Below are positions 58,511-59,835 of a stretch of 64,000 bases of DNA, piece by piece (position 1 is the stretch's first letter; the number at the start of each line of letters is the position of its first letter). The translations under genes were made by a program, and so were the position numbers. The notes under the pieces are model-generated. The model worked only from the letters and a program-made list of their open reading frames with translations, had not been told where the DNA came from and did not search any database. Source of the DNA: Macrostomum lignano (lineage: Eukaryota); the NCBI GenBank assembly GCA_002269645.1, contig NIVC01002492.1, positions 104,819 through 168,818 of the forward strand, written 5' to 3'.

Positions 58511-58546
58511 GTTAGGGTTAGGGTTAGGGTTAGGGTTAGGGTTAGG
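58511..58546 (+). repeat. Internal telomeric tract G(TTAGGG)5TTAGG
   Basis: Same orientation as the terminal array, grading into ACAAGGGTTA. Confidence 0.95.
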
Positions 58547-58635
58547 ACAAGGGTTACTGATCCGTCAGACCAGTCGGCCGCTGAACCACTTAAAATAAGG
58601 AAGGCTAAAAGACAGAAGCTAGAAATGGATTTGGT

Positions 58636-58675
58636 GCTCGACGCGTTTCGGTTAAGATTAACCTTCATCAGGAGC
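58636..58675 (-). ncRNA. Type I minimal hammerhead ribozyme (PLE type)
   Basis: Minus strand GCTC-CTGATGA-A-GGTTAA-TC-TTAACC-GAAA-CGCGTC-GAGC: full core, 6-bp stem II, stem I GCTC/GAGC, palindromic stem III, GUC cleavage triplet. Confidence 0.85.
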
Positions 58676-59072
58676 TAGTTAGTAGAGAGATCTAAGTTGG
58701 GTCTGGTATATTTAATAAATATAAAAACTGAGGGGAGGTTACAGCGAATGGGAGCGCGCGTGGGGTACAAGGAGCGAATGAGAACGCAGAGGAGAAAAAG
58801 TGGGGGTCGTGAGTGGCTGGGGGAGAGGGTGGGGGAGAGAAAGTATGGATGGAATGGGAGCAGGAGAGAGAAAGTATGGGGGAGATAGGAGCGACGTGCC
58901 AGAGAGACTGCAGCGCAGTAGGGGCAGGGACTCAAGAAGGAAAATCGGGGGGTGGGAATTAGCGAGATTGAGAGGAAATACAGGGCGAGGATGAGCGCAC
59001 GTGGTGTGCGGCGGGGAGAGGGAATTAGAGGGTCTAAAGGGTGTGCATTGGTGAGATAGGAGAGGGAGAGAG

Positions 59073-59310
59073 AGGGACTTAAGAATTGGAAATTGGAGAC
59101 AATGAAGGTTGGGGTAGGGACTTAAAGGGAATAAAGTTTTGGAAAAAATTAGAATGGAAATTTTAGCCTAGGGCTAAAGGGACTTAAGAATTGGAAATTG
59201 AAGACAAAGGAAGTTGGGGTAGGGACTAAAAGGGAATAAAGTTTTGGAAAATTTTACAATGGGAAAGTGAGCCTAGGGCTGAAGGGACTAAAGGAATGGA
59301 AGATTGGGAC
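59073..59310. repeat. About 104-bp tandem repeat, about 2.3 copies
   Basis: AGGGACTTAAGAATTGGAAATTG...AGCCTAGGGCT(A/G)A repeated. Confidence 0.8.
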
Positions 59311-59785
59311 AACGCTAAGCAAAGAATGAGCTGGAATAGCTAAGTGTTGGATCCGGGGGGGGGGGAAACACGAGGGAGATTAGTAGAAAAAAGTGGTACA
59401 TGTAGTTAATGATCACAAAGAGAGTACGGTAAAAAAATATCTATACACTCTGTGAGCACAAAGCTGCATGCACGGGTGAGTAAATATTAAAAAATTACTG
59501 TTCGAGTTAATAAAGAATCACGGTGGTCAGGTGGGCGTAGTCAGGCGGTCCGGTCGGAGGCAGAGTAGTGGAGCCGGCGGTAGAACGGTGTTGGTGCCGG
59601 ACGCTCCAGCCGAGGTGAGTCGGCGCAACAGCAGGGGGGGGGGGGTTGGCGCGGGAGGAGAAGAAATGCAGGAGGTGAAATGCCGAATGGGAGTGAAGAG
59701 GGGTTTTTAGATGGGAGTGAAGGGAATGAAGGGAACGGAGTTTGAGGGCCTGAGAACGGTATTTGAGGGCCTGAGAGCGGTTTAC

Positions 59786-59835
59786 GGTTAGGGTTAGGGT
59801 TAGGGTTAGGGTTAGGGTTAGGGTTAGGGTTAGGG

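What the first reader, a model, noticed from the sequence alone, without database searches (positions are those of the whole stretch)
58511..59786. Hammerhead-bearing, ORF-less unit capping the chromosome end: candidate non-autonomous telomeric retroelement
Seen: a short internal (TTAGGG)5 tract, 1.24 kb of non-coding purine-rich DNA, then the true telomere. On the minus strand a textbook PLE-type hammerhead (58675-58636) lies about 90 nt upstream of a small CUGA-CGGA-UCAG hairpin and a (CCCUAA)5 tail. Known: endonuclease-deficient PLEs (Athena, Terminons) end in hammerhead-containing repeats and reverse-complement telomeric repeats that anneal to the G-overhang to prime reverse transcription; they point 5'-end-out and are capped by telomerase. 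Inference: this is a minimal non-coding passenger of such a system that was copied onto an eroded or broken end (old end about 58546). That would be an RT-based end-healing route alongside telomerase in a TTAGGG animal.
Basis: partly seen in the sequence, partly recalled or inferred. Interest (0 to 1): 0.92.

Follow-up and report, generated by a model that had tools for sequence, protein, structure and literature searches.

The report
Hammerhead-bearing retroelement copy under a telomere
A 1.2-kb non-coding stretch lies between a short internal telomere-repeat tract and the real telomere. It carries a Penelope-type hammerhead ribozyme and a telomere-complementary 3' tail, which marks a retroelement copied onto a chromosome end. 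This kind of event is already known; here it appears as one ORF-less copy in an animal with ordinary TTAGGG telomeres.

Summary
A perfect (TTAGGG)~6 tract sits at 58511-58546. It is followed by 1,235 bp of ORF-less DNA that is 70% purine on the + strand, then by more than 4.2 kb of terminal TTAGGG repeats.

On the minus strand, 58675-58636 folds as a type-I minimal hammerhead with every published hallmark of Penelope-like-element (PLE) ribozymes. Rfam does not detect it. None of 2000 shuffles of the window gave a motif as good. Its helices also covary with the hammerheads of an endonuclease-containing (EN+) PLE in this window and of a distant PLE relative.

The cleavage site lies 93 nt upstream of a tail of two degenerate units and then perfect CCCTAA repeats. 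Orientation and both junctions match the endonuclease-independent end-attachment model described for Athena, Coprina and Terminon PLEs.

- that the unit is a non-autonomous "passenger";
- that it is multicopy at other chromosome ends;
- that it has an endonuclease-lacking (EN-) partner;
- that it serves as an end-healing route.

The unit is single-copy in the window, and the species appears absent from every searchable collection. A 5'-truncated autonomous element or an insertion into a pre-existing array remain possible. My verdict is a credible new variant or member of a known kind, resting on one locus.

The parts
58511..58546 (+). Internal perfect telomeric tract, (TTAGGG) about 5.8 copies. 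It equals (CCCUAA)n at the 3' end of the element's sense (minus) strand. It is the junction with unique AT-rich DNA, about 0.9 kb upstream of the start of the last host gene.
   Evidence: It is the only interstitial telomeric run in the window.
58547..58556 (-). Degenerate telomere-like units on the element side of the tract. The minus strand reads UAACCC-UUGUCC before the perfect repeats.
   Evidence: Read directly from the sequence. TRF reports a period-18 row at 58514-58556. Degeneracy on the distal rather than the proximal side fits a fixed tail belonging to the element (inference).
58556..58574 (-). 8-bp hairpin, ACUGGUCU-GAC-GGAUCAGU, immediately 5' of the tail.
   Evidence: Present in the MFE and centroid folds, but the spacer is no more stable than shuffles (z = 0.26).
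58575..58635 (-). Remainder of the 93-nt spacer between the hammerhead cleavage site and the tail.
   Evidence: It shows no significant similarity to the sequence downstream of the resident PLE's hammerhead (p = 0.17).
58636..58675 (-). Type-I minimal hammerhead ribozyme motif of the PLE kind. Helix I is 4 bp and the core is CUGAUGA. There is an extra A between positions 9 and 10.1 and a G10.1-C11.1 pair. Helix II is 5 bp, followed by GAA. Helix III/loop 3 is the palindrome ACGCGU. The cleavage site lies after C17 (58640).
   Evidence: The hallmarks are listed in PMC4209133.
58706..58731 (-). AT-rich block, CAGUUUUUAUAUUUAUUAAAUAUAC, 34-56 nt upstream of the hammerhead. It resembles a block at a similar offset upstream of the hammerhead of the window's EN+ PLE (17012-17043).
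   Evidence: Local alignment of 20/23 positions, p about 0.001 by shuffling. Alignment A2. Suggestive only.
59073..59306 (.). Internal 105-bp tandem repeat, 2.2 copies, 86-88% identical.
59733..59781 (.). 21-bp tandem repeat, 2.3 copies, at the element's 5' end. The copy begins with a partial repeat directly abutting the telomere, which hints at 5' truncation.
   Evidence: and the sequence. The truncation reading is inference.
59782..64000 (+). Terminal telomere array, about 707 copies of TTAGGG, running off the window. It has no embedded elements. Imperfections are concentrated in the last 1 kb.
13480..17147 (+). Context, not part of the unit. This is a resident EN+ Penelope-like element with an RT plus GIY-YIG ORF at 15164-16809 and 100%-identical 1,128-bp inverted arms. 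Its own min-hammerheads lie at 17066-17104 (+) and 13561-13523 (-) and use the same ACGCGU helix III.

Best explanation
The 1.24-kb segment is the DNA copy of a Penelope-like-element (PLE)-type RNA whose sense strand is the minus strand. I infer that it was reverse-transcribed onto a chromosome end rather than inserted by an endonuclease.

Proposed sequence of events:
1. The RNA ends in a hammerhead fold, a 93-nt spacer with a hairpin, and a tail of CCCUAA repeats.
2. The tail base-pairs with the G-rich 3' end of a short or de-protected telomere, or with a broken end.
3. That 3'-OH primes cDNA synthesis by a PLE reverse transcriptase. The enzyme is supplied in trans, or was encoded by a 5' part that this copy has lost.
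4. Telomerase then extends the cDNA end, which corresponds to the element's 5' end, with the present 4.2+ kb array.

Shown: the parts, their order and orientation, the authenticity of the hammerhead, and the lack of coding capacity.

Inferred: the priming mechanism, the source of the reverse transcriptase, and whether the copy is non-autonomous or 5'-truncated.

As a single copy with only a 2-bp helix III, the hammerhead is expected to cleave poorly. That would leave the tail attached, so its likely role here is structural, or the processing of multimeric transcripts.
For: - The hammerhead has all the PLE hallmarks that Cervera & de la Pena list as non-random. [quoted passage not shown]
- None of 2000 shuffles gave a motif as good.
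- In a three-sequence alignment with the window's EN+ PLE hammerhead and that of a PLE relative at 47% identity, 100% of cells pair. Five of 11 pairs show compensatory changes, a score reached by 1 of 500 shuffles.
- GAAACGCGTY occurs only three times in the window, and all three are in these hammerheads.
- The unit and the resident PLE share an AT-rich block upstream of the hammerhead.
- The hammerhead lies 93 nt from the only interstitial telomeric tract in the window and in the predicted orientation. With about three hammerheads per 120 kb of strand, I estimate the chance of this at about 0.003.
- Degenerate repeat units lie on the element side of the tract.
- The 5' end abuts a clean telomere.
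- The published model and architecture are the same.
- The interior of the unit is not degenerate telomere: 12 near-TTAGGG hexamers against 14.3 expected, and no TTAGG or GGGTTA.
Against: - There is only one copy in 64 kb, and no related DNA or ORF in any collection searched. No family, no variable 5' truncation and no partner reverse transcriptase have been demonstrated.
- Rfam models do not recognise the motif.
- The telomere-complementary repeats are 93 nt from the hammerhead, not immediately adjacent as in Terminons.
- The spacer and hairpin are no more stable than chance.
- No EN-less PLE is present in the window. The only PLE here is EN+.
- Cleavage at the hammerhead would remove the tail, so the ribozyme's role is unclear.
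- Read-level support for the junctions could not be checked.
Confidence: 0.6

Rival explanations
1. The unit was inserted into a pre-existing telomeric array by an endonuclease-containing PLE machinery or another site-specific one, as SART/TRAS elements do in insect telomeres. It was not added to a free end. The 36-bp proximal tract and the 4.2-kb distal array are then the two halves of one array.
For: - An active-looking EN+ PLE with a closely similar hammerhead sits in the same window.
- Telomeric repeats on both sides are what an intra-array insertion would also give.
- Proximal insertions are the ones that survive telomere turnover (inference).
Against: - The insertion point would be only 36 bp from the base of an array of about 4.25 kb.
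- The element's own 3' end runs into telomere-complementary units, including degenerate ones. This is the hallmark of EN-independent PLEs.
- None of the usual EN+ PLE signatures is present: no partial tandem or inverted copy, no pLTR pair and no recognisable target duplication.
- Repeat phase is uninformative.
Confidence: 0.15
2. The arrangement is a coincidence of history. The block is native or duplicated subtelomeric sequence that happens to contain an old PLE-derived fragment (a solo pLTR or retrozyme-like monomer). The short TTAGGG tract next to it arose independently, by telomere healing, recombination between ends, or telomerase-mediated break repair.
For: - PLE hammerheads are very abundant in metazoan genomes and have been noted near telomeric sequences (PMC4209133).
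- Retrozyme multimers are enriched toward chromosome ends in Xenopus (bioRxiv 10.64898/2026.07.22.740005).
- The unit contains tandem repeats typical of subtelomeres.
- There is only one copy.
Against: - It requires the tract to fall exactly at the 3' end of the hammerhead-bearing strand, in the right orientation and within 93 nt. I estimate this at about 0.003, given the window's hammerhead density.
- The degenerate repeats are on the element side.
- The interior of the block is not telomere-derived.
Confidence: 0.15
3. The arrangement is an assembly or read artefact. A chimeric join at a telomere-like tract has placed an unrelated 1.2-kb segment and a telomere onto this contig.
For: - Error or variant density in the array rises toward the contig end.
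- Junction support could not be checked.
Against: - The whole structure spans less than 6 kb, which single long reads should cover.
- The structure is biologically coherent in orientation and junction detail.
- The array is otherwise clean for more than 3 kb.
Confidence: 0.05
4. The hammerhead is a chance motif, and the block is an ordinary telomere-associated sequence with no retroelement origin.
For: - There is no Rfam hit.
- The core pattern alone occurs in 17% of shuffles.
- The overall folding z-scores are unremarkable.
Against: - The full descriptor scored 0 of 2000 shuffles as good.
- Every non-descriptor hallmark of PLE hammerheads is present.
- The motif covaries with bona fide PLE hammerheads.
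- It shares its helix III and an upstream block with the resident PLE.
Confidence: 0.04

Closest known systems
Athena elements and Terminons of bdelloid rotifers (EN-deficient PLEs; Gladyshev & Arkhipova 2007; Arkhipova et al. 2017, as summarised in PMC8557442 and PMC6431247)
   Same: [quoted passage not shown]
- The 3' end faces the centromere and is joined to G-strand repeats.
- The 5' end is capped by telomeric repeats.
- The location is at the chromosome terminus.
   Different: - There is no RT or any other ORF.
- The host repeat is TTAGGG, not TGTGGG-type.
- A 93-nt spacer with a hairpin lies between the hammerhead and the tail, rather than immediate adjacency.
- It is a single copy, not a head-to-tail array.
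- It has a strong G-run bias on the telomeric G strand, whereas Athena is reported to lack G4 potential (PMC10088271).
Coprina EN-deficient PLEs (fungi, diatom, clubmoss and, as cited, kuruma shrimp), e.g. Coprina-1_Alen in Ascochyta lentis
   Same: - The same TTAGGG/CCCTAA repeat system in fungi.
- The identical sandwich of chromosome, telomeric repeats, element and telomere at chromosome ends in a telomere-to-telomere assembly (PMC13159263).
   Different: - Coprina copies encode an RT (with DKN and thumb motifs) and are several kb long.
- Fungal and protist PLE hammerheads have a long helix III and are active as monomers (PMC4209133). This one is the metazoan dimer-type minimal motif.
Metazoan non-LTR retrozymes and PLE pLTR-derived non-autonomous elements (Cervera & de la Pena 2020; bioRxiv 10.64898/2026.07.22.740005)
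   Same: - It is non-coding and carries a type-I hammerhead related to PLE pLTR hammerheads.
- It is presumed to be mobilised by PLE enzymes in trans.
   Different: Retrozymes are tandem repeats of about 170-400 bp, each with a hammerhead, and give circular RNAs. Here there is one hammerhead in 1.24 kb, no unit-length tandem copy, and a telomere-complementary tail that retrozymes are not described as having.
Drosophila HeT-A, and endonuclease-independent LINE-1 retrotransposition at dysfunctional telomeres (own knowledge; HeT-A as reviewed in PMC5537684 and PMC10088271)
   Same: - An RT-less element copied onto chromosome ends using a reverse transcriptase supplied in trans.
- G-rich bias on the telomeric G strand.
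   Different: These are non-LTR/LINE lineage elements with poly(A) or oligo(A) 3' ends and a Gag ORF in HeT-A. They have no hammerhead and no telomere-complementary tail. Drosophila lacks telomerase, whereas this end is telomerase-capped.

Membership tests
Type-I hammerhead ribozyme, PLE 'min-HHR' class (Cervera & de la Pena 2014) | Conserved core CUGANGA ... GAAA ... U-H cleavage site, in type-I topology | tested here: met
   CUGAUGA / GAA-A / U-C at 58671-58640 on the minus strand.
Type-I hammerhead ribozyme, PLE 'min-HHR' class (Cervera & de la Pena 2014) | Base-paired helices I and II flanking the core | tested here: met
   Helix I is 4 bp (GCUC/GAGC). Helix II is 5 bp (GGUUA/UAACC). All pairs are kept, with compensatory changes, against two bona fide PLE hammerheads.
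Type-I hammerhead ribozyme, PLE 'min-HHR' class (Cervera & de la Pena 2014) | [quoted passage not shown] | tested here: met
   There is an extra A, a G-C closing pair and the palindrome ACGCGU. The criteria are quoted from PMC4209133.
Type-I hammerhead ribozyme, PLE 'min-HHR' class (Cervera & de la Pena 2014) | Match to the curated Rfam hammerhead covariance models | tested here: not met
   No Rfam family hit at the gathering threshold or at E<=10. The resident EN+ PLE's hammerheads were not reported either, so the models appear blind to this minimal class.
Type-I hammerhead ribozyme, PLE 'min-HHR' class (Cervera & de la Pena 2014) | Self-cleavage activity | not testable with these tools
   This needs in-vitro transcription of monomer, dimer and extended-helix-III constructs.
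EN-deficient telomere-associated PLEs (Athena / Coprina / Terminons) | Encodes a PLE-clade reverse transcriptase without a GIY-YIG endonuclease | tested here: not met
   The longest ORF is 86 aa. There is no Pfam or homologue signal and no tblastn trace of PLE protein. The only PLE RT in the window is EN+ and lies 41 kb away.
EN-deficient telomere-associated PLEs (Athena / Coprina / Terminons) | 3'-terminal hammerhead followed by reverse-complement telomeric repeats | tested here: met
   A hammerhead, then UAACCC-UUGUCC-(UAACCC)5. The difference is a 93-nt spacer rather than immediate adjacency.
EN-deficient telomere-associated PLEs (Athena / Coprina / Terminons) | Terminal location with the 3' end proximal and the 5' end capped by telomeric repeats | tested here: met
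   The same sandwich is described in PMC13159263.
EN-deficient telomere-associated PLEs (Athena / Coprina / Terminons) | A family of copies at several chromosome ends, with variable 5' truncation, often head-to-tail | not testable with these tools
   The unit is single-copy in the window. The species appears absent from the collections: the best protein hit to the window's PLE has 59% identity, exact look-ups failed, and eight DNA-pattern scans of the metagenome, viral and genome collections were empty.
Metazoan non-LTR retrozymes | Tandem repeats of about 170-400 bp, each carrying a hammerhead | tested here: not met
   There is one hammerhead in the unit. The internal repeats are 105 bp and 21 bp and carry no hammerhead.
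Degenerate telomere-derived subtelomeric sequence (TAS) | Enrichment of telomere-like hexamers inside the block | tested here: not met
   There are 12 near-matches against 14.3 +/- 3.4 expected, and zero TTAGG or GGGTTA.

The most novel reading that the evidence does not exclude
The unit belongs to an active, genuinely non-autonomous family, a 'telomeric SINE' of Penelope-like elements, in a telomerase-positive TTAGGG animal. In this reading an ORF-less RNA, with a hammerhead fold, hairpin and CCCUAA tail, is copied onto short or broken chromosome ends. The reverse transcriptase would be a PLE enzyme supplied in trans, possibly even that of the resident EN+ PLE, whose hammerhead and upstream block it resembles. 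This would give an RT-based end-healing route operating alongside telomerase, with a G-strand-biased body that mimics telomeric strand asymmetry.
Probability: 0.2. Interest if true: 0.8.

Novelty: new variant of a known kind. Interest (0 to 1): 0.55.

Why it matters
Telomere-attaching PLEs are the closest retroelement relatives of telomerase. They are the main living model for how telomerase may have arisen. So far they are documented with their own RT genes in rotifers, fungi, protists and plants and, as cited, in a shrimp.

An ORF-less copy with the metazoan dimer-type hammerhead would have several implications if it proves to be a family:
- The end-attachment strategy can be parasitised in trans.
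- It operates in animals with ordinary telomerase-maintained telomeres.
- EN+ PLE lineages may feed it.

It would also give a concrete, short substrate (about 150 nt of 3' end) for biochemical tests of telomere-primed reverse transcription.

If it is a one-off fossil, it is simply one more example of a known phenomenon.

Tried and rejected
- **Rfam scans.** The whole window at the gathering threshold and the region at E<=10 gave nothing. I replaced them with an explicit structural descriptor and shuffles.
- **Other copies in the window.** blastn with word size 7 found none.
- **Family members through called ORFs.** The 86-aa ORF and the peptide that starts at the AUG inside the hammerhead core and runs through the tail gave no homologues. 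A 148-aa stop-free frame searched against 1.84 billion representatives gave three weak multi-stretch hits (best E = 9e-10) in long proteins, which I judge to be low-complexity matches.
- **Exact-pattern scans.** The 3' end, the hammerhead and a family-level pattern (hammerhead, 75-105 nt, CCTAACCCTAACCC) were scanned in metagenome, viral and bacterial/archaeal genome contigs. All were empty.
- **Identifying the species.** Exact look-up of window TE proteins failed. The closest PLE protein in 5.8 billion is only 59% identical, and contig records gave accession numbers only.
- **Rejected readings.**
  - Degenerate telomere origin.
  - Retrozyme-type tandem organisation.
  - tRNA-derived SINE.
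  - Decayed PLE coding sequence.
  - Significant similarity downstream of the hammerhead to the resident PLE (p = 0.17).
  - A specially stable 3' hairpin or spacer.
  - A CpG-island or TERRA-promoter reading. CpG observed/expected is about 0.9 across the whole window, so the concept does not apply.
  - Truncation of a host gene by the chromosome end. The transgelin/calponin-like gene appears complete, with about 0.9 kb of upstream DNA.
- **Papers not held.** The primary papers of Gladyshev & Arkhipova 2007 and Arkhipova et al. 2017 are not in the library. Their content is cited second-hand.
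Full report
**What is there**

The right end of the window is a chromosome end. From 59782 to 64000 there are about 707 copies of TTAGGG (96% matches). There is no embedded non-telomeric block, and most imperfections fall in the last kilobase.

A second, short and perfect tract lies 1,235 bp inside the array, at 58511-58546 (six copies of GTTAGG, 100% matches). 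It is the only interstitial telomeric run in the window. On its distal side it continues with two degenerate units (TTAGGA, CAAGGG, TTA) up to 58556. On its proximal side it meets unique AT-rich DNA directly. That junction lies about 0.9 kb upstream of the first exon of a transgelin/calponin-like gene (CH domain and calponin repeat, 56785-57617 on the minus strand).

The 1,235 bp between the two telomeric tracts have these properties:
- They are single-copy in the window.
- They have no ORF above 86 aa and no trace of PLE protein coding.
- They contain no tRNA-like sequence.
- They are extremely strand-biased. The minus strand is 70% pyrimidine. The + strand has 47 runs of three or more G, and no runs of three or more C.
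- They are not decayed telomere. Near-TTAGGG hexamers are at expectation, and TTAGG and GGGTTA do not occur at all.
- They hold a 105-bp repeat of 2.2 copies (59073-59306). They also hold a 21-bp repeat of 2.3 copies that abuts the telomere and begins with a partial copy.

**The hammerhead**

On the minus strand, 58675-58636 reads GCUC-CUGAUGA-A-GGUUA-AUCU-UAACC-GAA-A-CGCG-U-C|GAGC.

Rfam finds no family, either at the gathering threshold or at E<=10. The bare pattern CTGATGA...GAAAC is not rare, occurring in 17 of 100 shuffles.

The motif nevertheless has every feature that Cervera and de la Pena (PMC4209133) report for PLE minimal hammerheads and single out as non-random:
- the G10.1-C11.1 pair;
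- a palindromic 15.2-16.2/loop 3 (ACGCGU), which allows a dimeric helix III;
- a large helix II and a short helix I.

I wrote a descriptor that requires the core, at least 4 bp in helix II, a palindromic helix III and at least 3 bp in helix I. It finds this single site in the window. Six of 2000 dinucleotide-preserving shuffles of the 59.8-kb non-telomeric part gave any hit, and none gave one as good.

The window also holds a bona fide EN+ PLE:
- Its ORFs at 15164-16809 carry the GIY-YIG signature ...VIYEFCC...YIGKTKRHLYTRAREH.
- It has 1,128-bp inverted arms that are 100% identical.
- 1,543 database homologues carry RVT_1, HTH_animal or GIY-YIG domains.
- Its 3' UTR carries a min-hammerhead, CUGAAGA-U-GAUC...GUGUC-GAAACGCGUU, at 17066-17104, mirrored at 13561-13523. 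It uses the same ACGCGU helix III.

GAAACGCGTY occurs only at these three places in the window. A PLE relative at 47% protein identity from another organism (L002) has CUGAUGA-A-GAUGC-AGGA-GCAUC-GAAACAUGUU.

I aligned the three hammerheads and counted pairs for the canonical structure. All 30 cells pair, and 5 of 11 pairs carry compensatory changes. Only 1 of 500 shuffles reaches this score, and slid controls fall to 23-41% paired. I therefore treat the motif as a real PLE-type hammerhead.

Upstream of it, the unit and the resident PLE share an AT-rich block (CAGTTTTT...TATTTATT(T)AAATATAC) at a similar offset. The local-alignment p-value is about 0.001. This suggests distant homology of the 3' regions but does not prove it. 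Downstream of the hammerheads there is no significant similarity (p = 0.17).

**The 3' end**

From the cleavage site (after C at 58640) it is 93 nt to the perfect CCUAAC repeats. Immediately before the tail sits an 8-bp hairpin, ACUGGUCU-GAC-GGAUCAGU (58574-58556). It appears in the MFE and centroid folds. The spacer as a whole folds no better than shuffled sequence, however (z = 0.26), so I attach no weight to the hairpin.

The two degenerate units UAACCC-UUGUCC lie between the hairpin and the perfect repeats. In an ordinary telomere, variant repeats accumulate proximally. Here they are on the distal, element side. This fits a fixed tail that belongs to the element (inference).

**How it most likely works**

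The literature describes exactly this layout for endonuclease-deficient PLEs:
[quoted passage not shown] Here the sense strand runs from the telomere inward. Its 3' tail is the complement of the G strand, and its 5' end carries a clean array of more than 4.2 kb. The most economical reading has four steps:
1. The CCCUAA tail of the RNA annealed to a G-strand 3' end.
2. That end primed cDNA synthesis by a PLE reverse transcriptase.
3. The second strand was filled in.
4. Telomerase re-capped the new end.

I put this at about 0.6. The parts, order and orientation are shown. The priming step, the enzyme and the timing are inferred.

Three points stay open:
- The five perfect repeats may be what was left of the old telomere, or they may have been copied from the element's own tail onto a non-telomeric break.
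- The copy may be non-autonomous, or it may be the 3' part of a larger element. Its 5' end starts inside a 21-bp repeat, which hints at truncation. On the other hand, 1.1 kb of non-coding sequence upstream of the hammerhead is long compared with the 340-nt 3' UTR of the resident PLE and with the roughly 420-bp terminal repeats of Coprina-1_Alen. I consider the two options about equally likely.
- The role of the hammerhead is unclear. Cleavage would detach the tail. As a monomer with a 2-bp helix III it should be nearly inactive, so a structural role, or processing of multimeric transcripts, is more plausible.

**Rivals**

- Insertion into an existing array by EN+ PLE machinery, about 0.15. This gives the same flanks, and an EN+ PLE with a similar hammerhead is present. 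It would, however, place the insertion 36 bp from the base of a 4.25-kb array. It does not explain the telomere-complementary tail, and the usual EN+ PLE insertion signatures are missing.
- A coincidental PLE-derived fragment next to an independently formed interstitial tract, about 0.15. PLE hammerheads are abundant and often lie near chromosome ends. The exact abutment and orientation have a chance of roughly 0.003 at the window's hammerhead density.
- An assembly artefact, about 0.05. This cannot be excluded without reads.
- A chance motif in a plain subtelomeric block, about 0.04. contradict this.

**What could not be done**

It needs the rest of the genome.

The species seems to be absent from every collection available:
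- Exact look-ups of window proteins failed.
- The best homologue of the window's PLE protein is 59% identical.
- ORF-based searches for the unit were empty or hit only low-complexity sequence.
- Eight DNA-pattern scans were empty.

The host is an animal, judged by its transposons: BEL/Pao, an EN+ PLE, a DIRS-like element, piggyBac and Ty3/gypsy. CpG is not depleted (observed/expected 0.87), which suggests an invertebrate (inference). The taxon remains unidentified.

**Comparison and novelty**

In mechanism the unit looks like an Athena/Coprina-type end attachment. It cannot be filed as a member of those families, because the defining RT gene is absent. It is not a retrozyme either, because it is not a hammerhead-per-unit tandem repeat.

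It differs from the described telomeric PLEs in four ways:
- It has no ORF.
- It has the metazoan dimer-type min-hammerhead rather than the long-helix-III monomer type of fungal and protist Coprina.
- It has a 93-nt spacer between the hammerhead and the tail.
- It has a strong G-run bias on the telomeric G strand. This property is reported for many telomeric retrotransposons but explicitly not for Athena (PMC10088271).

EN-deficient PLEs outside rotifers are already cited for an animal, the kuruma shrimp. The host range alone is therefore not a surprise.

I rate the finding as a tentative new variant of a known kind, with interest 0.55. It is a clean and mechanistically informative locus, but it is one locus, and the claims that would make it important are untested.

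Noticed in passing
window 13480-17147: An EN+ Penelope-like element. The RT and GIY-YIG ORFs at 15164-16809 are split by one frameshift. A 5'-truncated inverted copy forms 1,128-bp arms that are 100% identical, which suggests a very recent insertion. Each arm carries a min-hammerhead (17066-17104 on the + strand; 13561-13523 on the - strand) that Rfam also misses.
   Followed up: partly
window 36469-40501 (-): A DIRS-like retroelement. It has an RT with thumb domain (37294-39015) followed by an ORF ending in ...GHSLRRVGASAAF, which looks like a tyrosine recombinase but has no Pfam hit. Upstream lie a 227-aa ORF and a 247-aa ORF. The latter has a SAP domain and a run of hexapeptide-like GDACYL repeats.
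   Followed up: partly
window 8909-13033 (-), 24323-29776 (+), 31408-32865 (-): Three further apparently intact transposon genes lie within 50 kb of the telomere: a Ty3/gypsy polyprotein (1,374 aa), BEL/Pao (1,322 aa plus a 457-aa integrase ORF) and a piggyBac-type transposase (485 aa).
   Followed up: partly
window 41000-44108 and 55518-56050: A satellite-like block. 151-bp repeats are arranged as large inverted arms (570 nt, 88% complementary), followed by about 40 copies of a 23-bp repeat (43164-44108). Fragments of the same 151-bp family recur at 55518-56050, on the telomere side of the MBOAT gene.
   Followed up: no
window 50895-51189: A perfect 15-bp minisatellite, (TTTGACTGCCAGCCA)x12, followed by a 51-bp repeat of 2.2 copies containing the reverse complement of the same motif. 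It lies between exons of the MBOAT-like gene.
   Followed up: no
window 49595-52431 (-) and 56785-57617 (-): The last two host genes before the telomere are an MBOAT-family acyltransferase and a transgelin/calponin-like gene. The MBOAT exon aligns to residues 302-369 of human MBOAT7 and reads RHG where MBOAT7 has WHG. The transgelin/calponin-like gene has a CH domain and a calponin repeat. It appears complete and starts only about 0.9 kb from the internal telomeric tract.
   Followed up: partly
window 54146-55072 (-): A fragment of a non-LTR (LINE) reverse transcriptase, broken across frames, lies between the two host genes.
   Followed up: no
window 59355-59365 and 59634-59645: Two long G homopolymers (G11 and G12) lie inside the unit on the telomeric G strand. 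They are part of the extreme strand bias (47 runs of three or more G, and no runs of three or more C). The unit has two canonical G-quadruplex motifs, against one in the other 117 kb of strand.
   Followed up: partly
window 1-58510: CpG observed/expected is 0.87 over the whole non-telomeric window, so there is no CpG depletion. GC content swings from 0.32 (1-6 kb) to 0.58 inside the transposons.
   Followed up: no
window 63000-64000: Twelve of the 14 imperfect stretches of the telomere array fall in the last 1 kb. This looks like declining read or consensus quality at the contig end rather than biological variant repeats.
   Followed up: no
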